The notes under the pieces were generated by a model. It searched no databases. It saw only the letters and a program-made list of their open reading frames with translations, and had not been told where the DNA came from. Positions 15,878-47,682 of a stretch of DNA of 47,682 nt are shown here, piece by piece (position 1 is the first letter of the stretch; each line of letters begins with the position of its first letter). The DNA comes from Macrostomum lignano. Lineage: Eukaryota. The stretch covers positions 1 to 47,682 of the forward strand of contig NIVC01002030.1 in NCBI GenBank assembly GCA_002269645.1. The letters run 5' to 3'. The position numbers were made by a program, and so were the translations under genes.

Positions 15878-16790
15878 CAGTGCACTCTAAAAAAGGCATT
15901 CAATAGGCATTAATCTCGTATTGGTCCCTTGTTCGTCACATGCGATTGTTGTGCTAACATTGCATAACACAGCCAAGAGCCACACTCGGATAAGCCCTAT
16001 ACCTTTTCAAAGGGAATTATCACTTCGGAATATTTATATACAAGCAAGTGTTAATTGCGCAATCTTTATTGAGCTGTCCTCGCGGAAAATCTCTCAACAA
16101 AAATAATAGCATAGATTATTACGCAATCGTGAGTTGCCTAAAATTGATGGTAAATACGAAAATACCGAATGAGCAGCCGCGGTTATCGCATCTGAAAAGT
16201 TCGGTTCTGGTTTAGTTAATACTGCCGGCCCGGGAGTGGAAAGGTGAGAGAATAGGAGATGAGAGATGAGAGATAAGAGAAAAGAGGAGAGGCAAGAGAT
16301 AGGATGATAAAAAGATAGAGATAGATAGAAAAGATAGCAGTAGCGGATTTGGACGAGCTTGATTTTTTACTTTTTCTTTAGGTAATACAATAGGATATAG
16401 GGTAATGTTGGGAATGGAATTGGGTATAATGTTGGGAATATAGGATACAGCCAACGTGAGGAATAGAAAATAAATATATTTATAAAATAACTGCTGTGCA
16501 TATGCTGGGCTGACCTATAAGAACTGCTTCAAACTTCTTCGTTTATTTGTTTCTTAATAAGATATTGTCCATCGTCTCTTGTCACTTCGCTTACATTTTA
16601 CCAGCCTCTGATTAATCCAATTCGTGTCTAAAGCTATACAGGCCTACCTTTGTATCTTCAATCGATCTACTTTTTCAGTACCGGTTCCACTTTCTCCACA
16701 CTCTCAATTATACTTTCTCCACATTCTCAATTATACTTTCTTCACACTCTTAATCTAACTTATCTACCATCCGAATCTATTTCTCCACTC

Positions 16791-19700
16791 ACAGGATCTA
16801 CTTTCCACTTACAGGATCTACTTTCCACTCACAGGATCTACTTTCCACTTACAGGATCTACTTTCCACTCACAGGATCTACTTTCCACTCACAGGATCTA
16901 CTTTCCACTCACAGGATCTACTTTCCACTTACAGGATCTACTTTCCACTCACAGGATCTACTTTCCACTTACAGGATCTACTTTCCACTCACAGGATCTA
17001 CTTTCCACTTACAGGATCTACTTTCCACTTACCTACTTTCCACTTACAGGATCTACTTTCCACTTACAGGATCTACTTTCCACTTACCTACTTTCCACTC
17101 ACAGGATCTACTTTCCACTTACAGGATCTACTTTCCACTTACAGGATCTACTTTCCACTTACAGGATCTACCTTCCACTCATCGGTCTACTTTTCACTCA
17201 CCGGATCTACGAGTACTTTCCACTTACAGGATCTACTTTCCACTTACAGGATCTACTTTCCACTTACAGGATCTACTTTCCACTTACCTACTTTCCACTC
17301 ACAGGATCTACTTTCCACTTACAGGATCTACTTTCCACTCATGGGTCTACTTTCCACTCATGGGTCTACTTTCCACTTACAGGATCTACTTTCCACTTAC
17401 AGGATCAACTTTCCACTTACAGGATCTACTTTCCACTTACAGGATCTACTTTCCACTCATCGGTCTACTTTTCACTCACCGGATCTACGAGTACTTTCCA
17501 CTCACAGGATCTACTTTCCACTTACAGGATCTACTTTCCACTTACAGGATCTACTTTCCACTCACAGGATCTACTTTCCACTCACAGGATCTACTTTCCA
17601 CTTACAGGATCTACTTTCCACTTACCTACTTTCCACTCACAGGATCTACTTTCCACTTACAGGATCTACTTTCCACTCATGGGTCTACTTTCCACTCATG
17701 GGTCTACTTTCCACTTACAGGATCTACTTTCCACTCACAGGATCTACTTTCCACTTACAGGATCTACTTTCCACTTACAGGATCTACTTTCCACTCACAG
17801 GATCTACTTTCCACTCACAGGATCTACTTTCCACTTACAGGATCTACTTTCCACTTACAGGATCTACTTTCCACTCACAGGATCTACTTTCCACTTACCT
17901 ACTTTCCACTTACAGGATCTACTTTCCACTTACAGGATCTACTTTCCACTTACCTACTTTCCACTCACAGGATCTACTTTCCACTTACAGGATCTACTTT
18001 CCACTTACCTACTTTCCACTCACAGGATCTACTTTCCACTTACAGGATCTACTTTCCACTTACAGGATCTACTTTCCACTTACAGGATCTACTTTCCACT
18101 TACCTACTTTCCACTCACAGGATCTACTTTCCACTTACAGGATCTACTTTCCACTCATGGGTCTACTTTCCACTCATGGGTCTACTTTCCACTCATGGGT
18201 CTACTTTCCACTCATGGGTCTACTTTCCACTTACAGGATCTACTTTCCACTTACAGGATCAACTTTCCACTTACAGGATCTACTTTCCACTTACAGGATC
18301 TACTTTCCACTCATCGGTCTACTTTTCACTCACCGGATCTACGAGTACTTTCCACTTACAGGATCTACTTTCCACTTACAGGATCTACTTTCCACTTACA
18401 GGATCTACTTTCCACTCACAGGATCTACTTTCCACTTACAGGATCTACTTTCCACTCATGGGTCTACTTTCCACTCATGGGTCTACTTTCCACTTACAGG
18501 ATCTACTTTCCACTTACAGGATCTACTTTCCACTTACAGGATCTACTTTCCACTTACAGGATCTACTTTCCACTTACAGGATCTACTTTCCACTCATGGG
18601 TCTACTTTCCACTCATGGGTCTACTTTCCACTTACAGGATCTACTTTCCACTTACAGGATCAACTTTCCACTTACAGGATCTACTTTCCACTTACAGGAT
18701 CTACTTTCCACTTACAGGATCTACTTTCCACTCATGGGTCTACTTTCCACTCATGGGTCTACTTTCCACTTACAGGATCTACTTTCCACTTACAGGATCT
18801 ACTTTCCACTTACAGGGTCTACTTTTCACTCACCGGATCTACGAGTACTTTCCACTTACAGGATCAACTTTCCACTTACAGGATCTACTTTCCACTTACA
18901 GGATCAACTTTCCACTTACAGGATCTACTTTCCACTTACAGGTTCTACTTTCCACTCATGGGTCTACTTTCCACTCATGGGTCTACTTTCCACTTACAGG
19001 ATCTACTTTCCACTTACAGGATCTACTTTCCACTTACAGGATCTACTTTCCACTTACAGGATCTACTTTCCACTTACAGGATCTACTTTCCACTTACAGG
19101 ATCTACTTTCCACTTACAGGATCTACTTTCCACTCATGGGTCTACTTTCCACTCATGGGTCTACTTTCCACTTACAGGATCTACTTTCCACTTACAGGAT
19201 CAACTTTCCACTTACAGGATCTACTTTCCACTTACAGGGTCTACTTTTCACTCACCGGATCTACGAGTACTTTCCACTTACAGGATCAACTTTCCACTTA
19301 CAGGATCTACTTTCCACTTACAGGATCAACTTTCCACTTACAGGATCTACTTTCCACTTACAGGATCTACTTTCCACTTACAGGATCTACTTTCCACTCA
19401 TGGGTCTACTTTCCACTCATGGGTCTACTTTCCACTTACAGGATCTACTTTCCACTTACAGGATCTACTTTCCACTTACAGGATCTACTTTCCACTTACA
19501 GGATCTACTTTCCACTTACAGGATCTACTTTCCACTTACAGGATCTACTTTCCACTTACAGGATCTACTTTCCACTTACAGGATCTACTTTCCACTTACA
19601 GGATCTACTTTCCACTTACAGGATCTACTTTCCACTTACAGGATCTACTTTCCACTTACAGGATCTACTTTCCACTTACAGGATCTACTTTCCACTTACA

Positions 19701-19945
19701 GGATCTACTTTCCACTTACAGGATCTACTTTCCACTTACAGGATCTACTTTCCACTTACAGGATCTACTTTCCACTTACAGGATCTACTTTCCACTTACA
19801 GGATCTACTTTCCACTTACAGGATCTACTTTCCACTTACAGGATCTACTTTCCACTTACAGGATCTACTTTCCACTTACAGGATCTACTTTCCACTTACA
19901 GGATCTACTTTCCACTTACAGGATCTACTTTCCACTTACAGGATC
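16791..19945. repeat. 20-bp minisatellite, ~3.15 kb
   Basis: Unit acaggatctactttccactt with recurring 14-bp, 19-bp (atgggtctactttccactc) and longer (catcggtctacttttcactcaccggatctacgagt) variants. Confidence 0.97.
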
Positions 19946-24858: not shown

Positions 24859-26422
24859 AACAACAACAACAAAACAACAAAATACGCAGCCCCGCATGCA
24901 CAGTCACAGTTAGAGCAGGGCGCGTCAGATGGCGCGCCGCAGAGCCTGGGAGCGAATAAAGTCCGCTCCGTTGGCAGTGTCGGGCGCCCCAGCGTCGCAC
25001 AGCAGGCAGTCCACGTATCGACGGGTTCGGGCCTGACCCCGCCTGAACGGACCCTGCAAGGTGAGCAGCAGGACGTCCTGAACAGGTTGGGGTAGTAGCC
25101 CTCGGCCCGGATCACGTGACCCGCCAGTTGAAGTCGCCGCCGGCGCAGGATGGTGGACGGGCGCTGCAGCTTGGCCCGATCGTACAGGGCCTCGGTCCCG
25201 ACGCTCTCGTCAGCTCGAAAGGCCGCACGGAGCAGCTCTGAGTGCGCCGAGTCCAGCTGCCGCTCTAGCGTAGCCGTCAGCGTCCACGTCTCGGCGTTGT
25301 ACAGCAGGACGGTCTTGACCACCGCCTGCCACAGCCGAGCCCTCTGGCGGTCGGGCAGCGCTTCGGACTGGAGGACGGCTCGGATCGAACGAAAGGCCAC
25401 CCAGGCAAGTCCTCTGCGCCTCCGGAGGTCCTCTTCCACGTGGGGCACCAGACCGCCGAGGTAGGTGAACCGCTGGCAGCGTGCGAGCCTGCAGCCTGGT
25501 CGTCTGCCCGTCTGCGCCGCGGCACGTCAGGTCCGCTGGGATGTCGGCCGGCACAGTCAGCACCTCGGTCTTCAGCGTGTTGACGATCAGACCGACGCTC
25601 GATGCCACTTCGACCAGCCTGTCGATCTGGCCCTGGGCGCCTTCAACAGACGAGGACAGGAGGGCGAGGTCGTCGGCGTAGCCAAGCACGCTTAGGCGCT
25701 TTTCGCCGTGGCGGCGACCGATGCGTCTGCGCAGCAGGAAGCCGTCATTAGCCGTGGGGAGTGCGGTCCGAAGCACCCAGTCCAGCAGCAGCACGAAGAG
25801 GAACGGCGCTAGCGTGTCGCCCTGCAGAACTCCTGATGAAGTATCGAACAGGTCAGACAGGCCGTCCGCCGTCACCACAGCAGCTCGAGTATCGCAATAC
25901 AGCGCCATGACAGCGTCGATTAGCTGCTGGGGTACCCGGTAGGCTCGAAAGACAAAGGGAAGCGCGGCTCTCAGCACCGAGTCAAACGCCTTTCGAAAGT
26001 CAACGAAGACAATGATCAGCGTAGACTGGCGGATGCGCGCCTCCTCGATGACACGGCGGAGTGCAAGGATCTGTGTCACTGTGCCGCATTGCGGCCGGAA
26101 TCCGTTCTGCTCGTACTGCAGGTACGGGTCCAGCACCGACTGCAGACGATCGAGCAGCAGCCGGTTGAAGAGCTTCGCGAGATCATCAGCGAGATCCCGC
26201 GGTGGTCTTCCTTCCGCGTTGTCCCTGCCTTCTTCGGGATGTGCGCGACGGTCCACTCGGTAGGCGCAGGAGCGCCGGCGAGCACGCGGTTCATGACGCC
26301 TGTGACCTGGGAGGCTACACAACGGAGCCGCAGCGCTTCGACCGGGACTTCGTCGGGGCCGAGCGCCTTGCCGCCTGCCTGATCTTTTCCGAGCGAACAG
26401 CACAACTGTTATTTTACAACAG
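24859..26422 (-). mobile_element. 5'-truncated RTE-clade LINE with (TTG)n-like tail and 10-bp TSD
   Basis: RT motifs: KALGPDEVP, PKKAG..HRGISL, QNGFRP, FVDFRKAFDSV, GVLQGDTLAPFLF, LGYADDLALL, GLIVNTLKT, FTYLG, then the RTE-like tail VLLYNAETW...RRRRLQLAGHVIR. Stop at ~24925-24927; several frameshifts. TGAAATAAGC is duplicated at 24849-24858 and 26423-26432. Confidence 0.9.
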
Positions 26423-27260
26423 TGAAATAAGCACTGTGGCGCTAAAGTAAGCACTGTGGCGCTGAAATAAGCACTGTGGCGCTAAAGTAAGCATTGTGGC
26501 GCTGAAATTAGCACTGTGGCGCTAAAGTAAGCATTGTGGCGCTGAAATAAGCACTGTGACGCTGAAGTAAGCACTGTGGCGCTGAAATAAGCACTGTGGC
26601 GCTGAAATAAGCACTGTGGCGCTGAAATAAGCACTGTGGCGCTGAAATAAGCACTGTGGCGCTGAAATAAGCACTGTGGCGCTAAATCAAGCATTGTTGC
26701 GCTGAAATAAGCACTGTGGCGCTAAATCAAGCATTGTGGCGCCTAAATGACGCCATGGTAAGCATTTTGCACCAAATTAAGCATCGTGGCGCCATAATAA
26801 GCAGTGTGAGTATGGGGCTATAGCAAGCATTGTGGCGCCAAAGTAAGCATTGTGGCACCAAAGTAAGCATTGTGGCGCCATAATAAGCAGTGTGAGTGTG
26901 GGGCTATAGCAAGCATTGTGGCGCCAAAGTAAGCATTGTGGCGCCAAAGTAAGCATTGTGGCGCCAAAGTAAGCATTGTGGCGCCAAAGTAAGCATTGTG
27001 GCGCCATAATAAGCAGTGTGAGTGTGGGGCTATAGCAAGCATTATGGCGCCAAAGTAAGCATTGTGGCGCCAAAGTAAGCATTGTGGCGCCAAAGTAGCA
27101 TTGTGGCGCCAAAGTAGCATTGTGGCGCCAAAGTAAGCATTGTGGTGCCATAATAAGCAGTGTAAGTGTGGGGCTATAGCAAGCATTGTGGCGCCAAAGT
27201 AAGCATTGTGGCGCCAAAGTATGCATTGTGGCGCTATAATAAGCAGTGTGAGTGTGAGGC
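26423..27260. repeat. 20-bp minisatellite with GTGGCGC core and interspersed longer variant
   Basis: Units taagcactgtggcgctgaaa / taagcattgtggcgccaaag plus a recurring cataataagcagtgtgagtgtggggctatagc insert. One more unit lies left of the RTE at 24834-24858. Confidence 0.93.
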
Positions 27261-31841: not shown

Positions 31842-33870
31842 TCTCTACCCTCCCTGGCCTCTCTACCCTCTCTGGCCTCTCTACCCTCCCTGGCCTCTCT
31901 ACCCTCTCTGGCCTCTCTACCCTCCCTGCCCTCTCTACCCTCCCTGGCCTCTCTACCCTCCCTGCCCTCTCTACCCTCTCTGGCCTCTCTACCCTCCCTG
32001 GCCTCTCTACCCTCCCTGGCCTCTCTACCCTCCCTGGCCTCTCTACCCTCTCTGGCCTCTCTACCCTCCCTGGCCTCTCTACCCTCCCTGGCCTCTCTAC
32101 CCTCCCTGCCCTCTCTACCCTCCCTGGCCTCTCTACCCTCCCTGCCCTCTCTACCCTCCCTGGCCTCTCTACCCTCCCTGCCCTCTCTACCCTACCTGGC
32201 CTCTCTACCCTCCCTGGCCTCTCTACCCTCCCTGCCCTCTCTACCCTACCTGGCCTCTCTACCCTCCCTGGCCTCTCTACCCTACCTGGCCTCTCTACCC
32301 TCCCTGGCCTCTCTACCCTCCCTGCCCTCTCTACCCTCCCTGGCCTCTCTACCCTCCCTGCCCTCTCTACCCTACCTGGCCTCTCTACCCTCCCTGGCCT
32401 CTCTACCCTACCTGGCCTCTCTACCCTCCCTGGCCTCTCTACCCTCCCTGCCCTCTCTACCCTCCCTGCCCTCTCTAACCTCTCTGGCCTCTCTACCCTC
32501 CCTGCCCTCTCTACCCTCCCTGCCCTCTCTACCCTCCCTGCCCTCTCTACCCTCCCTGCCCTCTCTACCCTCCCTGCCCTCTCTACCCTCCCTGCCCTCT
32601 CTACCCTCCCTACCCTCTCTACCCTCCCTGGCCTCTCCACCCTCCCTGCCCTCTCTACCCTCCCTGCCCTCTCTACCCTCCCTGTCCTCTCTACCCTCCC
32701 TGTCCTCTCTACCCTCCCTGCCCTCTCTACCCTCCCTGTCCTCTCTACCCTCCCTGCCCTCTCTACCCTCCCTGCCCTCTCTACCCTCCCTGTCCTCTCT
32801 ACCCTCCCTGCCCTCTCTACCCTCCCTGCCCTCTCTACCCTCCCTGCCCTCTCTACCCTCCCTGTCCTCTCTACCCTCCCTGCCCTCTCTACCCTCCCTG
32901 CCCTCTCTACCCTCCCTGTCCTCTCTACCCTCCCTGCCCTCTCTACCCTCCCTGCCCTCTCTACCCTCCCTGCCCTCTCTACCCTCCCTGCCCTCTCTAC
33001 CCTCCCTGGCCTCTCTACCCTCCCTCAGGCTCCCTGCCCTCTTTACCCGCCCTGCCCCCTCTCTACCCTCCCTGGCCTCTCTACCCTCCCTGCCCTCTCT
33101 ACCCTACCTGGCCTCTCTACCCTCCCTGGCCTCTCTACCCTACCTGGCCTCTCTACCCTCCCTGGCCTCTCTACCCTCCCTGCCCTCTCTACCCTCCCTG
33201 CCCTCTCTAACCTCTCTGGCCTCTCTACCCTCCCTGCCCTCTCTACCCTCCCTGCCCTCTCTACCCTCCCTGCCCTCTCTACCCTCCCTGCCCTCTCTAC
33301 CCTCCCTGCCCTCTCTACCCTCCCTGCCCTCTCTACCCTCCCTACCCTCTCTACCCTCCCTGGCCTCTCCACCCTCCCTGCCCTCTCTACCCTCCCTGCC
33401 CTCTCTACCCTCCCTGTCCTCTCTACCCTCCCTGTCCTCTCTACCCTCCCTGCCCTCTCTACCCTCCCTGTCCTCTCTACCCTCCCTGCCCTCTCTACCC
33501 TCCCTGCCCTCTCTACCCTCCCTGTCCTCTCTACCCTCCCTGCCCTCTCTACCCTCCCTGCCCTCTCTACCCTCCCTGCCCTCTCTACCCTCCCTGTCCT
33601 CTCTACCCTCCCTGCCCTCTCTACCCTCCCTGCCCTCTCTACCCTCCCTGTCCTCTCTACCCTCCCTGCCCTCTCTACCCTCCCTGCCCTCTCTACCCTC
33701 CCTGCCCTCTCTACCCTCCCTGCCCTCTCTACCCTCCCTGGCCTCTCTACCCTCCCTCAGGCTCCCTGCCCTCTTTACCCGCCCTGCCCCCTCTCTACCC
33801 TCCCTGCCCTCTCTACCCTCCCTGTCCTCTCTACCCTCCCTGTCCTCTCTACCCTCCCTCTCTACCCTCC
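31842..33870. repeat. 18-bp minisatellite, ~110 copies, with a 732-bp higher-order duplication
   Basis: Unit ctctctaccctccctg(cc/gc/tc). Rare variants recur at a 732-bp offset (32477/33209; 33027/33759). Confidence 0.96.
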
Positions 33871-38909: not shown

Positions 38910-39845
38910 TACGAGGGTGCTTCAAATCTATAGTTTTGCCGTTCAGCCATTTCAAAAGCTTTTTTTCATAATTTTTTTCGGCTTTTATAAAGCACTTTTA
39001 TATAGAATTTATAGGGTGCAGTGTTTTCTTTTCATGTCTTTTTAACTGTATCTTTTCTGCACGAACTTTAAGCACCCCCTGAATTTTCCGCAAAATGCAC
39101 ACACAAGCAGAAATACCAAGCCCTCATATTAAATTTTGCAATTGAGGAGAAGATAAAGTCTGTACCCCACAACTTGTCCCTCTCTGCGCACCATCGAGCG
39201 ACTTTACAACGAATTCAAGCGTGGCAGGGTGAGCCATAAAAGTTGAGGCAGTAGCGCCCCGAATGCTTTCTCGTCGGGACTACTGCCTGACCTCTACAAT
39301 GAGAACCTGGATGGATTTGAGCGGTGAATCATTACTGGGGATGAGTGCTGGATCTGCCACTATGGAACCCCGAGTCTAAGCGAGATTCCAGGGCTGTTTC
39401 TTCTGGGACTGTCAGGGGATCCTGCTCGCCGAGTACCTGTCTGTTAGGCACACTGTCACAGGTGTCTGGTCCTCCGAACAGCTGGGCCGGTTTCGTCAGG
39501 CAGTGGTCCAGAAGAAGCGGGGGAAGCTGAGTGCTGGCCCCCTTGCTGCTTCACGACAATGCCTCAGCTCACACTGCCCAGGTTGCGGTGAATGCTGCCA
39601 CCACTGCGGGGTTCGAAATCCTCCCACATCCGGCCTATTCACCAGACCTGGCACCCTCCGATTTTCATCTATTCCGTCAGCTCAAGCGGCCACTCCATGG
39701 GCACCGCTTCGAGTCCAAAGAAGAGGTCATCACCCTCGCCAACCAGTGGCTAGAGGACCAAGAGGACCAGCGACACCCCGGGCGCTGCGCGACCGATGGC
39801 AGAAGTGCATTCATTGATCGCCAGGGGGACTATGTAGAAAAATAA
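38910..39845 (+). mobile_element. Decayed mariner (DD34D) transposon; left TIR only
   Basis: Starts TA-CGAGGGTGCTTCAAA, a mariner-type TIR start. Transposase remnants 39095-39845: ITGDECW, LHDNASAH and YSPDLAPSDFHLF with 34 residues between the 2nd and 3rd Asp, ending GDYVEK*. Stops, frameshifts and deletions; no right TIR seen. Confidence 0.88.
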
Positions 39846-40193
39846 GCTCTAACTATATGAACGACAATTCTGTGTAGAATTCGGTTAGTTTAAATCAGTC
39901 TAGGTAAGTGGTGTACGCGCAGTCTTATGCGCAGCAACTTCAGAAAAGACTTACTATGAAGTTTTAAAAAAATTACCGAAAATTTTACTGCTATCCTTCC
40001 CACTCTCTACAGCATAGAAAAAAACAGTTTGCGTAGGCCTAGACAAAAACTAGCTTTCATGCGCAAATAGTTCCACTTATGTCAGTAGAGAGATTGGCAT
40101 GCCAGGAACGAATGCTTTATGAAAACGAATGTTTAATTAAAGCGGTTACAGAATTTTCTAGATAATAAAAGCTACCCAGAGATGATTTACTTC

Positions 40194-40254
40194 AACTCTG
40201 GTTTCTCTTCATTCCACGATTAAATCTTTCGCCTTTTACTAAAGATTTCCGTGG
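40194..40254 (+). ncRNA. U5: U5 spliceosomal snRNA gene, 5' half (interrupted)
   Basis: AACTCTGGTTTCTCTTCATTCCACGATTAAATCTTTCGCCTTTTACTAAAGATTTCCGTGG matches the metazoan U5 5' domain. Invariant loop 1 GCCTTTTAC lies at 40231-40239, closed by AAATCTTT/AAAGATTT. Confidence 0.93.
40241..40254 (+). repeat. 14-bp target-site duplication AAAGATTTCCGTGG (copies 40241-40254, 40844-40857, 47297-47310)
   Basis: The identical U5-derived 14-mer is present at all three array junctions. Confidence 0.85.
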
Positions 40255-40843
40255 TGATTTCCGAAGTGACCACGCTCTGAAACGCAACTAATAAAACTAA
40301 ACTTGCTGCCTGAGACAGAGATCGGTTGATCAGTCATTAGGACTGATTAGGTAATCTCTATGTCTCCTCGCGTTTCTTTTTACAATTTTCCCAACTGTGT
40401 TTTTTACCCAACTGCTCTACAAATATCACTAATTGCTTTTTTACACCTTTACTATATTCATTCTATTTTTACAACTAAATTCAAATATGCGCTATTGCAT
40501 TTTTAATCTCTATTTTTTTTTACTTAAATGTCTTGCTTTTACTCTCAATAGGCCTTCAAATATCTAGCACGTATTTTTTAGATGTCCTGTTTTTATTAGA
40601 TCCCTTCTTTGTGTGGGATTTCCCTCCCCTCTTTTTTATCCCCAAATGCGTGCAAAATACTGCAAAATATTGAAAAATAGTTTTATATATTTATATTTTT
40701 AATTTCAATATTCGTATTAAATATTCAAATCGAAATCTTGTAAATATTTTTAATTCTTTCGATAAAATACAAAATATAACTGCGGCAGAGTTCTTCGGAA
40801 CTGACCCGCGCCGGTTTCGACGGCACCTCGTTTTAACAACAAA
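40255..40843 (+). mobile_element. 5'-truncated copy (3' UTR only) of the U5-associated LINE
   Basis: 40263-40843 is near-identical to 46724-47296. It ends ttttaacaacaaaaaa, has an 8-nt junction insert tgatttcc and is flanked by the 14-mer. Confidence 0.85.
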
Positions 40844-40912
40844 AAAGATTTCCGTGGAGGGATACCCTTAGGAGAATTCTCTAGTTTTTGCAGGCCTTTC
40901 CTAGAAAGGCTT
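40844..40912 (+). ncRNA. U5: U5 snRNA 3' half at the head of the full-length LINE copy
   Basis: GATTTCCGTGGAGGGATAC completes stem Ib against host GTTTCTCTTCA. Sm-like AGTTTTTG at 40883-40890; terminal stem-loop AGGCCTTTC-CTA-GAAAGGCTT at 40892-40912. Confidence 0.8.
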
Positions 40913-41135
40913 ATTAGAAATAGAATAGTTTAGACTAGCCTAGCTTAGCTCTTAAAAGTACTTTAGTTAGCCTTCCATTCCACTGTACATTTGTTTTTAT
41001 CTCTACTCTACCCCACCCCTAGTCTTATCTTGCAGTCGCCCCACCCCTCTCAGCGAGCGCACTTTGTGTGCCTCCTGACTCATTAGTTAGTTGTAGTTTA
41101 GGTTTAGTTTGAGTGTACCCAAATAATCACGCCAT

Positions 41136-43839
41136 ATGGCTGCAAATCGCGCCAGCGCTAAAAAGATGGACTGCCGGCCCTCTCTCGAGCACCGGTATCG
41201 TCCGAACGAAGCCTACGGTCGCCAGCTTCTTGGACTGACGCCGACAGCTGAGCCATCGACTGCGAGCCCGCCGCCAGCAGGCCTGATGCGAGCTCGACGC
41301 AGTCTGGAAGGCCGCCACTCGATCAGCCCACCGGCCGGCGAGCTCTTGCGCAACGCAGAGGAGATCCTGCGAGAGAATGAGCAGCTGCCGGAGGCTGCAG
41401 GCGCAGAGGCAGAGCAGCGCATGTCTCTCGACTGCGACGAGCCAGGCCAGACAAGCGCCCTGCCATCCAACGAGGCCGCAGCAACCACCGAGCCACCAAC
41501 TGCCGAGTCCAGCGAGCTCAGTGCGGCAGCGGCAGCGCCGACGTCTGAGGAGCGCCAGCAATCGGCTGCAGACCAGGCCTCGACGCTGCCAAAGCCCCCT
41601 GCCGAGCAACTGGACGCTGACATCAGTCAAATCATCTTCCCTGATGAGCCTGACTTGACTGACTGTCAGCAGACGATCTACGCTAGCGACAGCACCATCA
41701 TCTATGCGCCCAAGTTCCTGAGCGAGGTCGCGGACCAAGTCTACGAGCGCCTGATCACCGACCTGCTGCCTCAAGCCTTTCAGCATCGTCCGAGTGAGCA
41801 GCGCCGCGTCTACTGGATCGGCCCGTCGTACACCTACAGCGGGGTTGAGCTGAAGGAAAATCTAAACTGGCATCAGGTAATTGAAGACATTCGTGACTTC
41901 ATTTACCATGATACCCAGTTCGATGTCCCGAAGTTCAACTCCGTGTTGGTGAACTTCTACACCGAGCCGGGAGACCGGATTCCCTGGCACTCGGACGATG
42001 AGGATGAGCTCGGCGACAGGCCGACGATCGCGACCGTGTCCTTCGGTGCTGAGCGGCTGTTCATGCTGCGCCGTCGGGACGGCAACGTGACGCACCGCTT
42101 TCCAACGCTGCCAGGCTCGCTGATTCTGATGGCAGGAAACTGCCAGAAACGCCTGCAGCACCAGGTGCCCGCCGCCCACTCTCAGAATGGCGTCCGCATC
42201 TCGCTAACATTCCGTGTCACCAAGCCGGAGCTGCGGCGCAAGCGAGCTCTGCCGGATGACCCGACCTACAGCCAGCCGCTAAACGGCGGCCCATTCGGCG
42301 ACGACCAAGGCGGTCGGGACGACGACCAAGGCGGCCACGACGACGACCAGGGCGGCCGGGGCGACGACAGGCCCCAGGAGCGGCAGGCGACGGCGACGCG
42401 AGACCGCGAAGGCGATCGGGGTCGGCGCGGCCGTGGCGGCCACCAGCGAGGCAGGCGAGGAGGTCGCGGCGCGGCGTCCGGTGCGGCGGCGGCTTCGGCG
42501 GCTTCCTGGCCGGCCGGTGCGGCGGCGGCTTCGGCGACAAGCGCGCAGGCGGCTGCGGCAGCGCGGCCCTACGCGCAGGTTGCGGCGCGCCCTGCGCCGC
42601 CCAGAAGGCCCCAGGCTGCCATCCCGCCGATCGTTTTGAGGTGCACCGGGACGCGGCCAACAAGCTGATGCAGTTCGTTGCCTGGCTGCAGACCAACTTT
42701 GCCGGCGAAGCTAGAGCCGTCAACACTGCGCCGATGGCGAATCAGCCGGCCTATCTCGTGTTCCCAGCGTCGGAGCGGGACTACAACGTCTTCCTGGGCG
42801 GCGCGCTGCGCGAGGAGAAGCTGCTCGAGCATCCCGTAAAGCGCCGTCCAGCCCGAGCCCGACCGCTGGACAACAGAACAGGGCCCGACAGAGTGCAGCA
42901 GCAGCCGGTACGCACCTTTGTCGCTACTGAGGTGCCCCTCGCGTTCTCGGAGGCTGACTTCGCGACCCTGTTGCGCGACACGCTCAAGCTGGACATTGTC
43001 AGCGTCCACAGAATCCGAGCCAGAGCGACTGGGAAGGCAACCCAGTTCGTGCGCATCTTCACAAAGTCGGCGATGACCTACGAGAAGTGCCTCCGCGATG
43101 GCATCTGCACCGACTTCTTGAAGTTCAACTGCGAGGACAGCCGCACAGACGAGCCGGTCCGCGCTCTGCAATGCCAGCGCTGCCAGGAGTTCGGCCACCG
43201 CGCTGCCAGTGTCGGGGGCAGCAGCGCTGCCGGATTTGCGGCGGCCAGCATTCCTGGAAGGAGTGCCAGCACGAGGGCCCAGCGGTCTGCGCCAACTGCG
43301 GCGGCTCGCACCGAACCACCAGTCGAGCCTGCACCGTCGCCAAGGCGGAGCACGACAAGGCGACCAGAGCGGCTGCTGAGGCCAAAGCCGCGGCGCGAGC
43401 TGCGGAAGCTGCGGCCGCTGCTGCCCCAGTGTCAAGTGAGACCGACGACGCCGCCGCCGACGACGACTCCGACAGCGGCTGGCTGATCCGCCGAGGCAGG
43501 CGCACGGTGCCGGTACCCGCCGCGATCCGGCCGCTTGTCATCGTGACCGATGATGCCAGGAGCGCTCCGGCGGCAGAGACCGAGTCTGATGTCAATGCGA
43601 CTGCTCCGTCAGCTGATGCCGGCCAGGCGGTGCAGCTGCAGCTTAGTGACTTTATGTCGGTGGTGAGCATGCTGTTGCCCCTGATCACCCGCTCTCTGAC
43701 TCAAGTGGTTGTGCAGGCCCTGTCCCGACCGCCTGGGGAGGTCCTCACTGTGGAATCAACCAGTAAAATGGTTGAGGACATTGTGCGGGCTGCACTCCAG
43801 GAAGTGCCGGGCATGGCTGGCATGACCACTGAGTCCTAG
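41136..43839 (+). CDS. LINE ORF1: AlkB 2OG-Fe(II) dioxygenase + RGG-rich linker + gag-like region with three Cys/His zinc knuckles (2 frameshifts)
   Basis: ORFs 41136-42668, 42641-43486 and 43087-43839 join if one base is added at ~42648-42650 (G-run) and at ~43206 (C). Motifs: WHSDDE, PYAQVAA..IPPIVL, CQRCQEFGHRAAQC, CRICGGQHSWKEC, CANCGGSHRTTSRAC. Confidence 0.85.
41697..42215 (+). CDS. AlkB-family (ALKBH2/3-like) 2OG-Fe(II) dioxygenase domain within ORF1
   Basis: FNSVLVNFY..GD.I.WHSDDE..LG..PTIATVSFGAER.F...GSLILM.G..Q...QHQVP...RISLTFR. HxD at 41988-41996, distal His at 42159, R-x5-R at 42195-42215. Confidence 0.93.
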
Positions 43840-43925
43840 TCTCAGGCAGCTAAACTCAAGACTTGAATTGAAACTTCAGTGCGTTAACTGTAGACTCAAA
43901 CAATCAAACCACAGCCCTGAAGATT

Positions 43926-46658
43926 ATGCATTTAAACTGCAGGGGATTCAACCCGAAAATCAGAGAGCTGACACAGTGGGTCGTCAGTCAGGAGCTAGAC
44001 ATTGCCCTCTTCTCTGAGACCATTCTCAAAAGTTGTCACACTGTCCAGATTCCCGGGTACTCCATCATTCGGTATGATACCCCGCAAGTCAAACGCGGGC
44101 TTCTCCTTGCCCACTCTCCTCGCGTCAAACTCACAAATGTGCGCTTGCAGTATGACAATGTCAACCATGAAGCCATCTCTTGCACCGTGAGCTTGTCTGA
44201 CAACTCTGGTCCTGACTTCAATCTTGCTCTGGTGTACAGGTCTCCAGCACCGTATCATCTGAACCTGAACCTACTCAAAAATCTTCTCTCCGTAGGCGCA
44301 GTGTGCTCATGGGTGACCTCAATGCCAGACACCGCTTCCTCGGGGTGACAGCAGCAACAACATGGCTGGCTACCAGCTGCACGACTGGCTGTCTGAGGGC
44401 CCCACCTCGCCCACCATTCTCAATCAAGCCGGTCAGTTCACCAGACTGGCCACCAAAAACGGGCTGATTTCTAGGAATGTCTTGGACCTCGCCCTGGCCA
44501 CTGAGGACTTTCTCCCATTTGTGCAGGACTTTGAGGTGGGTCCTGACCTGGGCAGTGACCACTTACCTATAATCCTCACGCTCAATATTCAGTCGAAGAA
44601 ATGGGCTGGTCCCCCCAGACCCAAAAACTTCTCAAAAACAAACTGGGACGAGTTCAGACTCAAAATCAGTGAAGCTTTGAGCTCAGATCAGAATATTAAA
44701 TTATCAAATGCTGACCAAATCAATGCCGAAGTGGATCACATCACAAAGGCCATTCACACCGTGATTGACTCCACAGTACCAGACTGTGGTGCCAAAAACG
44801 CCCTACCCAAGTACATCCTCGACCTGATCAAAGAGCGCAGACGACTCAGACGCCTCTTCTTCAGCACACGGGATCAAAATTTCAAAACCCAAGCAAACCA
44901 GCTCGCAAATCGCATAAAGAGAGAAATTAACTCCTTCCAGAATGGAAAGCTCACCAAAGTCTGTGAGAGTATTGTTGAAAACAGCAAGAACAAGAAAGTG
45001 AAGAATTTCTGGCATGACACTAAAAAGCTGATGGGCAAATTTAAGCCAACCTCATCCCCAGCCTCACCCTGGGTCAAACAACTGCGCACACAGATCTGGA
45101 GAAGGCTAACCTTCTAGCCGAGACTCTGGACTCAAAGATGCGCCCAGTCCCTTCCACATGCGAACAGCTCAAACGTGAGGTGGCCGATGTGGCACAGCTC
45201 ACCTCATTCTACCCCGTTCCTGAGGGAATCGAACCCATTGAGACCCACCCACTTGATGCTGCATTCTCTGTGGCAGACACAGTGTGGGAACTGGAGCACC
45301 TCAGGCCTGATGGAGCACCCGGGCTGGACAAGATTCCCAACTGCGTCCTCAAGCTGGGCTTAGAGGGGTGGCAATCACGAGACTCACTAACCTCTTCAAC
45401 GCCTGCTACGGTCGAGGGATTTTCCCCAGCGCCTGGAAGAAAGCTGTGGTGACAATGATCCCCAAGCCGGACAAACCGCCCGAACACCCCAACTCCTACA
45501 GACCAATCAGCCTGACCTCATGTCTGGGCAAAGTGTTTGAGAAGCTTATAGCAAAAAGACTCACCAAGCACCTTGAGGATAATAAGACCCTAGGAGATGA
45601 CCAATGCGCCTACCGCAAAATTCACTCCACGTATGACAACCTGTGCCGTCTGGCACAAGATGTCATGGTAGCAAAGTGCAAAGCTAAAAAGTCCGCTGCA
45701 GTCTTCCTGGATGCAGAGGCAGCTTTTGACTCCACCTGGCACGACAAGATCAGGCATAGCATGCTCACCGATGGTTTTCCACCTATGCTCATGCGAATCC
45801 TGTCTGACTACCTGCGAGACAGACAGATCCAGGTTCGAATCGAGGGGGCCCTAAGCGATCCCCACACCATCCAGGCTGGCGTCCCTCAGGGAGGCATTCT
45901 GAGCCCTCTCCTGTACCTCCTCTTCGTCAGCTCAATGCCGACTCCCACCATCTCAAGCGTCAAACGCAGTCAATTCGCAGACGACATGGCCGTCTGGGCC
46001 TCAGCAGACACCTTTGCGGGGCTCCGAACATCCCTTCAAAGCTACCTCAGACGAGTCTTTGACTGGTGCGGTAAACAAGGCATTAGACTGAATGCCGGTA
46101 AAAGCAAAGCAATCGCTTTCAACTACAAACCCACTAGGCGCATGGACTTGCGACCCAAACTGTATCTGGGGACACTGAGGTTCCGTACTGTCAGGAGGTG
46201 AAATTCCTGGGTGTCCTCCTTGACCAGAGCCTCTGCCTGAACAAACATGTGGACAACATGGCAGATACCAGCAGAGCCATTGTAATGTCACTGTGCAGAA
46301 TTGCAAAAATGACTAAGCTGAGTAGCACCACCCTCAGAATGCTGTACAGGGCATACGGAGAAAGCGCTCTCACCTACGGAGCGCCAATCCTGAGCCAAAT
46401 TGTGCGACTAACCAAATCAAATTGCAGAAAATTCAAAACCTGGCTCTCCGTATCTGCTATGGTGTGCCATCCTACATCAGCATTGAATACCTGCACAAGC
46501 TGGCAGGTATGCCGATGCTCGCAGACAGGGTCAAGCAGCTGGGGGTGGCTTGGCTGCTCAAGATGAGGGCAGCCAAGCTCCACAGCTTCCACATTGAGCC
46601 GGAAGCCCCTCGGGCTCCGGGCCGAACCCCGTCCTCAATGTCCTCTGGGATGCCATGA
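43926..46658 (+). CDS. LINE ORF2: AP-like endonuclease + reverse transcriptase (about 6 frameshifts); no RNase H recognised
   Basis: APE: HLNCRG, LFSET, GDLNARH, LDLAL, GSDHLP. RT: APGLDKIP, WKKAVVTMIPKPDK..YRPISLTSCLGKVFEKLI, FLDAEAAFDSTWH, GVPQGGILSPLLY, QFADD, LNAGKS, KFLGVLLD. Jockey-like tail QKIQNLALR..G.P.YI..LH..AG. Confidence 0.92.
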
Positions 46659-47296
46659 GGCGTCGGGAAAGAAACAGGGGAATCCCACCCCAGGGTTAGG
46701 CTGGCTACCAGCCTTCCAAACCGGAAGTGACCACGCTCTGAAACGCAACTAATAAAACTAAACTTGCTGCCTGAGACAGAGATCGGTTGATCAGTCATTA
46801 GGACTGATTAGGTAATCTCTATGTCTCCTCGCGTTTCTTTTTACAATTTTCCCAACTGTGTTTTTTACCCAACTGCTCTACAAATATCACTAATTGCTTT
46901 TTTACACCTTTACTATATTCATTCTATTTTTACAACTAAATTCAAATATGCGCTATTGCATTTTTAATCTCTATTTTTTACTTAAATGTCTTGCTTTTAC
47001 TCTCAATAGGCCTTCAAATATCTAGCACGTATTTTTTAGATGTCCTGTTTTTATTAGATCCCTTCTTTGTGTGCGGATTTCCCTCCCTCTTTTTTATCCC
47101 CAAATGCGTGCAAAATACTGCAAAATATTGAAAAATAGTTTTATATATGTATTTTTAATTTCAATATTCGTATTAAATATTCAAATCGAAATCTTGTAAA
47201 TATTTTTAATTCTTTCGATCAAATACAAAATATAACTGCGGCAGAGTTCTTCGGAACTGACCCGCGCCGGTTTCGACGGCACCTCGTTTTAACAAC

Positions 47297-47364
47297 AAAG
47301 ATTTCCGTGGAGGATACTCTTAGGAGAATTCTCTAGTTTTTGCAGGCCTTTCCTAGAAAGGCTT
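47297..47364 (+). ncRNA. U5: Second U5 snRNA 3' half at the head of the next LINE copy
   Basis: Near-identical to 40844-40912. Sm-like AGTTTTTG at 47335-47342, with the same terminal hairpin. Confidence 0.8.
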
Positions 47365-47682
47365 ATTGGAATAGAATAGTTTAGACTAGCCTAGCTTAGC
47401 TCTTAAAGTACTTTAGTTAGCCTTCCATTCCACTGTACATTTGTTTTTTATCTCTACTCTACCCCACCCCTAGTCTTATCTTGCAGTCGCCCCACCCCTC
47501 TCAGCGAGCGCACTTTGTGTGCCTCCTGACTCATTAGTTAGTTGTTAGTTTAGTTTAGTGTGAGTGCACCCAAATAATCACGCCATATGGCTGCAAATCG
47601 CGCCAGCGCTAAAAAGATGGACTGCCGGCCCTCTCTCGAGCACCGGTATCGTCCGAACGAAGCCTACGGTCGCCAGCTTCTT
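47311..47682 (+). mobile_element. Start of a further head-to-tail copy of the same LINE (runs off the window; ORF1 ATG at 47587)
   Basis: Near-identical to 40858-41231 with scattered substitutions and indels; translates MAANRASAKKMDCRPSLEHRYRPNEAYGRQL. Confidence 0.9.

What the first reader, a model, noticed from the sequence alone, without database searches (positions are those of the whole stretch)
40858..40945. Element-borne U5 3' half looks maintained for folding but has a variant Sm site
Seen: TGGAGGGATAC pairs with host GTTTCTCTTCA at 10 of 11 positions counting G-U pairs. The 9-bp terminal hairpin is intact in both copies. The Sm-like site reads UAGUUUUUGC instead of the usual AAUUUUUG. 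Inference: the LINE may supply a variant U5 isoform that could enter spliceosomes, or weaken Sm loading and 3'-end processing so that some transcripts read through into ORF1. The downstream gtttagactag might be a leaky 3' box (speculative).
Basis: partly seen in the sequence, partly recalled or inferred. Interest (0 to 1): 0.7.

Follow-up and report, generated by a model that had tools for sequence, protein, structure and literature searches.

The report
U5 gene half carried by LINE
A jumping gene (LINE) of the flatworm Macrostomum lignano that inserts only into U5 spliceosomal RNA genes travels with its own copy of the back half of a U5 gene, so each insertion rebuilds a complete but altered U5 gene in front of itself; in this window that rebuilt gene has since been split by a later, truncated insertion.

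Summary
Window 40858-40915 is the 3' half (about nt 62-119) of a U5 snRNA gene. It has a 10/11-bp stem strand, an intact 9-bp terminal hairpin and an unusual Sm-like site, AGUUUUUG.

The window is the start of a Macrostomum lignano scaffold. A U5 gene (5' half 40194-40254) was hit at nt 49/50 by a 590-bp 5'-truncated LINE copy with a 12-bp target-site duplication. Downstream lies a head-to-tail array whose unit is U5 3' half, 23-nt flank, then a 6.36-kb LINE.

Two other scaffolds show the same unit directly behind an uninterrupted U5 5' half. That junction is a full-length U5 gene (Rfam 83.5-83.8 bits). On one scaffold the array ends in a different, more canonical U5 3' half (type B, Sm AUUUGUG). 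The window-type half (type A) therefore came with the element and is not a duplication of the local target.

Types A and B keep the terminal hairpin through two compensatory pair changes. None of 119 other U5 genes has AGUUUUUG.

"Element-borne", "folding kept" and "variant Sm site" are supported. Function as a snRNA, and read-through caused by the Sm site, are untested. Here the two halves lie 603 nt apart. Verdict: a new variant of the known target-specific LINEs.

The parts
40090..40193 (+). U5 gene promoter region. It contains a conserved PSE-like block (TGCTTTAYGAAAACGAAKGTTT) and a TATA-like block (TTTCTANATAA).
   Evidence: These blocks are conserved against the otherwise about 80%-identical flank of the second U5 locus, and the flank is about 96% identical to a third locus. 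The promoter role is inferred from position.
40194..40254 (+). Resident (host) U5 snRNA 5' half, about nt 1-61, including loop 1 (GCCUUUUACUAAAG).
   Evidence: Rfam RF00020 hit 40206-40257, 43.8 bits, model positions 14-63. Identical from nt 3 to nt 61 in all three loci.
40243..40254 (+). Target-site duplication, left copy (AGATTTCCGTGG, U5 nt 50-61).
   Evidence: Exact repeat at 40846-40857 flanks the truncated LINE copy.
40255..40845 (+). 5'-truncated LINE copy: the last part of ORF2 and the 3' UTR, with an (AAC)n/A tail. It splits the U5 gene.
   Evidence: 98.5% identical to 46724-47298. The homologous locus L004 lacks it and has an uninterrupted U5.
40846..40857 (+). Target-site duplication, right copy. 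It is also the start of the U5 segment that leads each LINE unit.
40858..40915 (+). Type-A U5 3' half (about nt 62-119). Stem 3' strand lies within 40855-40865, Sm-like AGUUUUUG at 40883-40890, terminal hairpin at 40892-40912.
   Evidence: This is the finding itself.
40916..40938 (+). 23-nt U5 3' flank carried with the half. It includes gtttagactag (40928-40938).
   Evidence: At the distal end of the NIVC01002892.1 array, similarity to the window stops exactly after this segment. It is partly alignable to the type-B flank.
40939..47298 (+). Full-length LINE. 5' UTR 40939-41135. ORF1 41136-43839 (AlkB-like 2OG-Fe(II) oxygenase plus 3 CCHC knuckles, frameshifted here). ORF2 43926-46699 (AP endonuclease plus reverse transcriptase, frameshifted here). 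3' UTR 46700-47298.
   Evidence: Pfam hits PF13532 1e-21, PF14529 and PF00078 4.7e-36. An intact 926-aa ORF2 lies at L002 12792-15572, and P0124 is a 688-aa ORF1 version that starts at an internal Met and lacks the C-terminal end.
47299..47389 (+). Second copy of the U5 segment (TSD sequence, type-A 3' half, 23-nt flank). It has a 1-nt deletion in the stem strand.
47390..47682 (+). Start of the next LINE unit (5' UTR and the beginning of ORF1). It is cut off by a 2317-N scaffold gap.

Best explanation
**Shown.** The window holds a U5 snRNA gene of Macrostomum lignano occupied by a U5-specific AP-endonuclease-type LINE. The LINE's 3' end always joins U5 at nt 49/50. Every 5'-complete unit is led by the same 93-nt U5 segment: nt 50-119 of a divergent 'type A' U5 plus 23 nt of its 3' flank. 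Where such a unit sits behind an uninterrupted resident 5' half, the junction is a complete, full-scoring U5 gene. The U5 3' half that was there before is left behind the array.

**Inferred.** The template RNA is a co-transcript that starts upstream of the LINE proper. It starts either at the U5 promoter, reading through the 3'-end signal, or in the preceding array unit. The cDNA therefore ends with U5 sequence. That sequence anneals to the resident U5 at the target and gives a seamless 5' junction. The effect is to swap the gene's 3' half for the element's version, rebuild a promoter-linked U5 gene in front of the LINE, and set up the next round of co-transcription. Unequal exchange between the 93-nt repeats can then expand the array.

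**In this window.** The rebuilt gene was later hit by a 591-bp 5'-truncated copy with a 12-bp duplication, so no 119-nt U5 can be made from this locus. Type A most likely began as a host U5 isoform. Its stems are kept by compensatory changes, but its Sm site is non-canonical. Whether it works as a snRNA is unknown.
For: - **Site specificity.** Eleven LINE 3' ends on three scaffolds all abut AGATTTCCGTGG. One short older tail relic abuts ATTTCCATGG.
- **Duplication.** The truncated copy has a 12-bp TSD, and the homologous locus lacks that copy.
- **Unit structure.** The U5 segment plus LINE repeats with a 6.45-kb period at 97-99% identity.
- **Rebuilt genes.** L002 9666-9781 scores 83.8 bits and L004 1123-1238 scores 83.5 bits, both full length. 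Their promoter flanks are only about 80% identical to each other but share PSE-like and TATA-like blocks.
- **Element-borne.** In L004, type A precedes the LINEs and type B follows them. The contig has no Ns.
- **Layering.** A type-B half, a 25-nt flank, a LINE-tail relic and a decayed type-C half lie in series.
- **Type B is more canonical than type A.** A profile of 110 other U5 genes gives 90.3 bits with B, 72-74 with A and 59.0 for the 5' half alone.
- **Structure kept between A and B.**, and P about 0.004.
- **Sm site unusual.** 0 of 119 other U5 genes have it.
- **Precedent for the principle.** In R2, upstream 28S sequence left on the RNA 5' end is postulated to prime uniform 5' junctions (PMC3774820). 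In Phytophthora, Utopia elements have intact U2 genes upstream and U2 nt 39-end downstream (PMC4640811).
Against: - No RNA data exist, so the co-transcript is inferred from DNA architecture alone.
- Only three loci from one long-read assembly could be fetched, and two of them are alleles or homeologs.
- Arrays of 99%-identical 6.4-kb units are prone to misassembly. A false join inside a LINE could fuse the front of a type-A locus to the back of a type-B locus.
- DNA-level ectopic conversion could give the same picture.
- The first capture event is not explained. The NIVC01002892.1 array looks exactly like a 93-bp TSD at a native type-A gene.
- No 5' processing ribozyme was detected.
- snRNA-type promoters normally give short transcripts, so a 6.5-kb read-through RNA would need a leaky 3' box, and none has been shown.
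Confidence: 0.6

Rival explanations
1. Long target-site duplication. The LINE proper (from 40939) inserts into native type-A U5 genes with the second nick about 93 bp downstream. This duplicates U5 nt 50-119 plus 23 nt, and unequal crossing-over then builds the arrays. The type-A half would be host DNA copied at each site, not carried by the element. The type A/type B arrangement in L004 would be an assembly misjoin.
For: The NIVC01002892.1 array starts and ends with the same 93-nt segment, followed by unique flank. All units share one 5' junction. Arrays of near-identical units are hard to assemble.
Against: The only unambiguous single insertion has a 12-bp TSD. L004 is gap-free and carries type A in front and type B behind. 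Two loci with about 80%-identical promoter flanks carry 99%-identical type-A segments.
Confidence: 0.15
2. Spread at the DNA level. The type-A half and the LINE moved between U5 loci by ectopic gene conversion or unequal recombination between arrays, using the U5 5' half and the LINE body as homology. No co-transcript RNA is involved.
For: The long, 99%-identical LINE bodies and identical 61-nt U5 5' halves provide homology. Array unit composition differs between the window and its homolog L004.
Against: The left homology is only about 61 nt plus diverged promoter. The element was recently active as a retrotransposon, shown by the truncated copy with a TSD and by the intact 926-aa ORF2. The older layer in L004 shows the same architecture with a different half.
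Confidence: 0.2
3. The element-borne half is selected to supply a working variant U5 snRNA, or its weak Sm site is selected so that transcripts escape snRNP assembly and 3' processing and run into ORF1.
For: Rebuilt genes score as full U5 and keep their promoters. Stems are kept relative to type B. The Sm site is unusual. ORF1 starts only 221 nt after the U5 3' end.
Against: There are no expression, Sm-binding or splicing data. Stem conservation may date from before the capture. Copies are too alike to show selection within the element. The Sm site is not known to control snRNA 3' cleavage (general knowledge). Type A loses one stem pair and the first pair of helix Ia and scores 16 bits below type B.
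Confidence: 0.2
4. snRNA/LINE chimeric retrocopy. The reverse transcriptase switched template from LINE RNA to U5 snRNA, as in the mammalian U6/L1 chimeras, giving U5 fused to a truncated LINE at a random site.
For: The segment 40194-40845 on its own looks like a U5 5' part fused to a 5'-truncated LINE 3' end.
Against: The U5 part has its own conserved promoter, shared with two other loci. The rest of the gene follows after a 12-bp TSD. The uninterrupted state exists in L004.
Confidence: 0.02

Closest known systems
Utopia (restriction-like endonuclease) and Keno (AP endonuclease, Tx1 clade): LINEs specific for U2 snRNA genes (PMC4640811)
   Same: They make strict insertions at one nucleotide of a Pol II snRNA gene and form tandem arrays. 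In Phytophthora, intact snRNA genes lie upstream of the element and 5'-deleted gene fragments lie downstream.
   Different: The target here is U5, not U2. The authors explained the intact upstream U2 by deletion on integration. Here a different 3' half behind the array indicates that the half in front was brought by the element. The protein set also differs: an AlkB-like ORF1 and a Jockey-like ORF2 without a C-terminal zinc motif.
Tx1-clade family listed with target 'U5 snRNA' in Fig. 3 of Kojima 2015 (PMC4494074), and the L1/Tx1-like LINE found here inside a U5 gene on metagenome contig OFEQ01000009.1 (L101)
   Same: Both are LINEs that sit in U5 snRNA genes.
   Different: In L101 the insertion is at a different U5 position (after ...GAAUGAGC). 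The LINE 5' UTR abuts the U5 5' part directly, with no carried 3' half. ORF2 has a zf-RVT domain. The Repbase family could not be compared because no sequence was on hand.
R2 elements of 28S rRNA genes (PMC3774820)
   Same: R2 is expressed as a co-transcript with the target gene. Target sequence kept on the RNA 5' end is postulated to anneal at the target and give uniform 5' junctions.
   Different: R2 keeps at most 36 nt of upstream target sequence and uses an HDV-like ribozyme. No ribozyme family was detected here. The carried segment lies downstream of the insertion point and rebuilds the gene, whereas R2-inserted 28S genes stay broken.
Bacterial integrative elements and phages that insert into tRNA genes and carry the gene's 3' end (general knowledge)
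   Same: The mobile element carries the distal part of its target RNA gene, so the target is whole again after insertion and the old distal part is displaced.
   Different: Those elements use site-specific recombinases on DNA. This element uses target-primed reverse transcription in an animal genome.
SINEU, SINEs with snRNA-derived heads (PMC4494074), and R2 SIDEs (PMC3414825)
   Same: snRNA sequence is joined to a LINE tail. The type-B half plus the short LINE-tail relic in L004 resembles an internally deleted, non-autonomous derivative.
   Different: SINEU heads are U1- or U2-derived and disperse through the genome. Here the U5 piece is a 3' half and stays at the U5 target.

Membership tests
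U5 spliceosomal snRNA (Rfam RF00020) | 5' stem-loop with the invariant loop 1 (GCCUUUUAC) | tested here: met
   Window 40206-40257, 43.8 bits against a gathering score of 40. This part lies in the resident 5' half, not in the finding's interval.
U5 spliceosomal snRNA (Rfam RF00020) | Full-length match to the covariance model as one contiguous gene | tested here: not met
   In the window only model positions 14-63 match, and the 3' half is 603 nt away. The same half joined to an uninterrupted 5' half does meet it: 83.8 bits in L002 and 83.5 bits in L004, model 1-117.
U5 spliceosomal snRNA (Rfam RF00020) | Canonical Sm site (RAU3-6GR) in a single-stranded stretch before the 3' hairpin | tested here: not met
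   The site reads UAGUUUUUGC. Of 119 other U5 tails, 108 have AUUU there and none has AGUUUUUG. One has the analogous ACUUUUUGG. The stretch is predicted single-stranded.
U5 spliceosomal snRNA (Rfam RF00020) | 3' terminal hairpin and lower stem I pairing with the 5' end | tested here: met
   The 9-bp hairpin is fully paired. Helix Ib has 10 of 11 pairs in type A. Helix Ia has 3 of 4.
U5 spliceosomal snRNA (Rfam RF00020) | Expressed, TMG-capped, Sm-bound RNA that joins the tri-snRNP | not testable with these tools
   No RNA or protein-binding data were available.
Target-specific non-LTR retrotransposon (LINE) | ORF2 with AP endonuclease and reverse transcriptase | tested here: met
   Pfam Exo_endo_phos, Exo_endo_phos_2 and RVT_1 (1.6e-36) on the intact 926-aa ORF2. 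The window copy is frameshifted.
Target-specific non-LTR retrotransposon (LINE) | 3' junction at one nucleotide of one target sequence in independent insertions, with 5'-truncated copies and a TSD | tested here: met
   All 11 LINE 3' ends on 3 scaffolds abut U5 nt 50. One 591-bp truncated copy has a 12-bp TSD. Genome-wide strictness was not tested.
R2-like co-transcription with 5' self-cleavage | Self-cleaving ribozyme at the element's 5' end | tested here: inconclusive
   No ribozyme family appears in window 39500-41500 even at E up to 10. Rfam holds only described families.
R2-like co-transcription with 5' self-cleavage | Element RNA made as a read-through transcript of the target gene | not testable with these tools
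   Inferred from architecture only.
Tx1 clade (the clade of Keno and of the listed U5-specific family) | L1/Tx1-type ORF2 with a C-terminal zinc-binding motif, and RT phylogeny | tested here: inconclusive
   No Cys/His motif is visible after the RT and there is no zf-RVT hit, unlike L101. ORF1 has three CCHC knuckles of the Jockey/I/R1 type. No reference RT set was available for a tree.
U6/L1-type chimeric retrocopy | snRNA fused to a truncated LINE at a non-snRNA site, without snRNA promoter or gene remainder | tested here: not met
   A conserved promoter lies upstream and the gene remainder follows after a 12-bp TSD.

The most novel reading that the evidence does not exclude
The LINE is a gene-rebuilding parasite of U5 genes. 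It is expressed from the host U5 promoter by read-through, and every insertion replaces the gene's 3' half with its own structurally competent but Sm-atypical version. U5 loci would then be converted serially, in the order type C, then B, then A as seen in L004. Part of the worm's U5 snRNA pool would be element-encoded, and the atypical Sm site or 3' flank would tune the split between snRNA and LINE mRNA.
Probability: 0.25. Interest if true: 0.8.

Novelty: new variant of a known kind. Interest (0 to 1): 0.62.

Why it matters
Target-specific LINEs are thought to survive by hitting multicopy genes that the host can afford to lose. A LINE that restores its target, and at the same time places itself behind the target's promoter, would be a different strategy. 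It resembles tRNA-gene-integrating elements of bacteria and has, to my knowledge, not been described for an animal retrotransposon.

It would also explain how an element can persist in a low-copy snRNA gene family. Kojima and Jurka raised this puzzle for Utopia (PMC4640811).

It would make U5 isoform diversity in this species partly a product of retrotransposition. M. lignano is transgenic-tractable, so read-through and Sm-site effects can be measured directly.

Tried and rejected
1. **Simple reading: host 3' half displaced by one insertion.** True for the truncated copy, but it does not explain why the same half precedes every LINE unit.
2. **Long 93-bp TSD.** Kept as a rival. It is contradicted by the type A/type B arrangement in L004 and by the 12-bp TSD.
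3. **Homology between the distal flank of the NIVC01002892.1 array and the LINE 5' UTR.** None found: local score 19 against a shuffle mean of 18.1.
4. **Covariation among element copies.** The copies differ at only 5 positions of the half, all within the stem 3' strand and the internal loop (the first ~18 nt of the half). This is not informative.
5. **Unit phylogeny, to see whether promoter-proximal units are the masters.** No clear clustering.
6. **More element copies.** Exact-protein look-ups of two window ORF2 fragments found nothing. The ORF1 homolog search was swamped by low-complexity words. The search with the AlkB domain alone found only bacterial-type AlkB outside this family.
7. **Related RTs.** P0001 and P0004 lie on contigs that lack the 3' junction, with no U5 nearby.
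8. **Clade assignment via PDB.** L1 ORF2p and R2 score alike, so this is uninformative.
9. **Ribozymes or other RNA families in the 5' region.** None.
10. **Ordinary, LINE-free U5 genes of M. lignano.** No tool can scan this eukaryotic genome, so this was not done.
11. **Literature.** No paper was found on U5-gene retrotransposons in flatworms.

Full report
**Origin and layout**

The window equals positions 1-47682 of scaffold NIVC01002030.1 of assembly GCA_002269645.1. A near-identical protein from the same assembly is named as Macrostomum lignano. The window ends at a 2317-N gap.

Rfam finds one family above threshold. It is U5 snRNA at 40206-40257, at 43.8 bits, and covers only model positions 14-63. 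The 12-mer AGATTTCCGTGG occurs three times, at 40243, 40846 and 47299, against 0.21 expected.

- Between the first two copies lie 591 bp (40255-40845). They are 98.5% identical to 46724-47298, the end of ORF2 and the 3' UTR of a LINE.
- After the second and third copies comes the same sequence: the rest of a U5 gene, 23 nt, a 197-nt leader, and ORF1.

The window therefore holds, in order: a U5 5' half; a 5'-truncated LINE copy with a 12-bp target-site duplication; and a head-to-tail array with a period of about 6.45 kb. The array unit is U5 nt 50-119, a 23-nt flank, then a 6.36-kb LINE.

**Checking the observation**

- On the Rfam U5 structure, type-A sequences form 10 of 11 pairs in the lower stem, with one U.U. 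They form all 9 pairs of the terminal hairpin.
- The hairpin is identical in both window copies.
- The second copy lacks one G in the stem strand.
- Rfam aligns the Sm region as AGUUUUUG against the consensus AAUUUUUG.
- Folded alone, the half is not unusually stable (z about -1). The hairpin forms and the Sm-like tract stays single-stranded.

In this window the two halves are 603 nt apart, so this locus cannot make a U5-sized RNA.

**Related loci**

Exact look-ups of ORF1 variants brought in two more scaffolds.

*NIVC01002892.1.* An uninterrupted U5 gene (L002 9666-9781) scores 83.8 bits over the whole model. Four LINE units follow it directly, and each is preceded by the same U5 segment. After the last LINE the segment appears once more. 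Similarity to the window then stops exactly after ...GTTTAGACTAG, which is window 40938. This sets the start of the LINE proper at 40939. The flank beyond that point shows no homology to the LINE leader.

*NIVC01003829.1 (L004).* The promoter flank and 5' half are 96% identical to the window's. The U5 gene is uninterrupted (83.5 bits) and two LINE units follow. The last LINE tail abuts AGATTTCCGTGG followed by a different U5 3' half, called type B here. Just downstream of type B come about 25 nt of flank, a short relic of a LINE tail, and a third, decayed U5 3' half called type C. Neither array contains Ns.

The promoter flanks of the two independent loci are only about 80% identical, yet they share a PSE-like and a TATA-like block. 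The 5' halves are identical.

**What this means for "element-borne"**

If the type-A half in front of the LINE were a duplication of the local target, the half behind the array in L004 would also be type A. It is type B. The only clean single insertion, the truncated copy in the window, made a 12-bp duplication, not a 93-bp one.

The simplest reading is that the 93-nt type-A segment is part of what is copied into new sites. A template RNA that begins upstream of the LINE proper would give this result. It could begin at the U5 promoter or in the preceding unit. Its cDNA would end in U5 sequence that can pair with the resident U5 at the target. The outcome is a seamless junction, a rebuilt gene, and a displaced old half.

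This follows the principle proposed for R2 5' junctions (PMC3774820). It matches the unexplained pattern seen with Utopia in Phytophthora, where intact U2 genes lie upstream and U2 nt 39-end lies downstream (PMC4640811). The series A, B, C in L004 fits repeated rounds, with the oldest displaced half the most decayed.

The RNA step is an inference. Ectopic conversion between arrays, or an assembly misjoin combined with a long duplication at native type-A genes, are the rivals.

**Is the half a variant, and is it maintained?**

I fetched 119 distinct U5 3' tails from metagenome contigs that share the exact loop-1 region.

- 108 have AUUU in the Sm region and none has AGUUUUUG. The nearest analog is one ACUUUUUGG.
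- Type B has GAUUUGUGA, a U1-like canonical site. It also keeps the widespread GGAGAGGAACA and AAUGAGU motifs, which type A lacks.
- A sequence profile of 110 of these genes gives 59.0 bits for the 5' half alone, 72-74 with type A, 90.3 with type B and 64.0 with type C.

Type A is thus the divergent form. Even so, A and B keep the terminal hairpin through two double (compensatory) changes and one one-sided change, with no broken pair. Two of the three changes in the lower stem also keep pairing. Five random substitutions would preserve all eight hairpin pairs in about 0.4% of trials. In type C the hairpin is broken.

Type A has therefore evolved under a folding constraint. This may date from a time when it was an ordinary host isoform, because the NIVC01002892.1 array ends in type A and may sit in a native type-A gene. 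The element copies themselves differ at only five positions of the half. All five lie within the stem 3' strand and the internal loop (the first ~18 nt of the half), and none lies in the Sm tract or the hairpin. With 0.06-1.2% divergence between units, this says little.

**The element**

- ORF1 is about 900 aa when intact. It has an AlkB-like 2OG-Fe(II) oxygenase domain (PF13532, 1e-21) followed by three CCHC knuckles.
- ORF2 is 926 aa and intact at L002 12792-15572. It has an AP endonuclease and a reverse transcriptase, with no RNase H and no C-terminal zinc motif.
- The window copy has frameshifts in both ORFs. Some of these may be long-read errors.
- Best RT relatives are 40-59% identical uncharacterised or 'jockey'-labelled proteins. 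PDB comparison does not settle the clade.

A Tx1 family with target U5 is listed in a figure legend of Kojima 2015. I also found an L1/Tx1-like LINE inside a U5 gene on metagenome contig OFEQ01000009.1. It sits at another U5 position and has an ordinary 5' junction. U5 genes as LINE targets are therefore known. The carried gene half is the new feature.

Nothing here tests whether the variant RNA is made or bound by Sm proteins. The step from a weak Sm site to poor 3' processing and read-through conflicts with what is known of snRNA 3'-end formation, which depends on the promoter-coupled Integrator and the 3' box (general knowledge). The proposed box gtttagactag is carried with the half but is not conserved in the type-B flank. 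The better-conserved flank words are GAAGT and AA(A/U)AGU. A weak Sm site could still matter after transcription, by keeping a co-transcript out of the snRNP pathway. That idea is a hypothesis only.

**Verdict**

- The object is a U5-specific LINE whose unit includes a U5 3' half that rebuilds the target gene. This is a new variant of target-specific LINEs.
- The main caveats are the three-locus sample, reliance on one assembly, and the lack of RNA evidence.

Noticed in passing
window 41136-43839 (ORF1); L004 6233-8299 (688-aa version, P0124): The LINE ORF1 carries an AlkB-like 2OG-Fe(II) oxygenase domain (PF13532, 1e-21). The HxD...H and RxxxxxR motifs are visible (WHSDDE, LQHQV, RISLTFR). 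It sits ahead of three CCHC knuckles. The nearest relatives of the domain are bacterial AlkB at about 40% identity. AlkB domains are described in orchid Ty3/Gypsy elements (PMC9289625), but one literature search found no LINE case.
   Followed up: partly
L004 12117-12300: Behind the type-A arrays lie a well-formed type-B U5 3' half, about 25 nt of flank, a short relic of a LINE tail (..GTACCTCATTTTAACAATA) and a decayed third U5 half. This suggests earlier rounds of the same process, or a short non-autonomous derivative made of a U5 half plus a LINE tail.
   Followed up: partly
L101 (metagenome contig OFEQ01000009.1), minus strand, about 12470-6220: An intact U5 gene is followed 460 bp later by a second U5 that breaks off after ...GAAUGAGC. 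It runs into an L1/Tx1-like LINE with ORF1 carrying CCHC and ORF2 carrying APE, RT and zf-RVT. An Sm site plus hairpin reappears after the LINE. This looks like a different U5-specific LINE with a conventional junction.
   Followed up: partly
window about 41022-41037: The leader has a pyrimidine tract followed by AG (cttatcttgcag|tcgcc) about 100 nt upstream of the ORF1 ATG. It could be a splice or SL trans-splice acceptor in a co-transcript.
   Followed up: no
window 1-39000: Most of the window upstream of the U5 gene is made of many different 16-48-bp minisatellite arrays, for example 16775-19945 (20-bp unit, 160 copies) and 31842-33859 (18-bp unit, 113 copies). The long ORFs there are repeat artefacts with spurious Pfam hits.
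   Followed up: partly
window 25210-26454, minus strand: A fragment of an unrelated reverse transcriptase (RVT_1, 1.5e-24) lies between minisatellite arrays.
   Followed up: no
L001 16548-21533 (scaffold positions 47683-52668): The LINE array runs into a 2317-N scaffold gap. A long 30-bp satellite (TGTTTACCTTGTAGTCAGTGAGTTTGTGTG) follows the gap, so the distal end of the window's array is not assembled.
   Followed up: yes
metagenome loci L006-L125: Five of the 119 U5 tails depart from U5 soon after GGAACAUUA or AAUGAG. They may be further insertions or pseudogenes in U5 genes of other eukaryotes.
   Followed up: no
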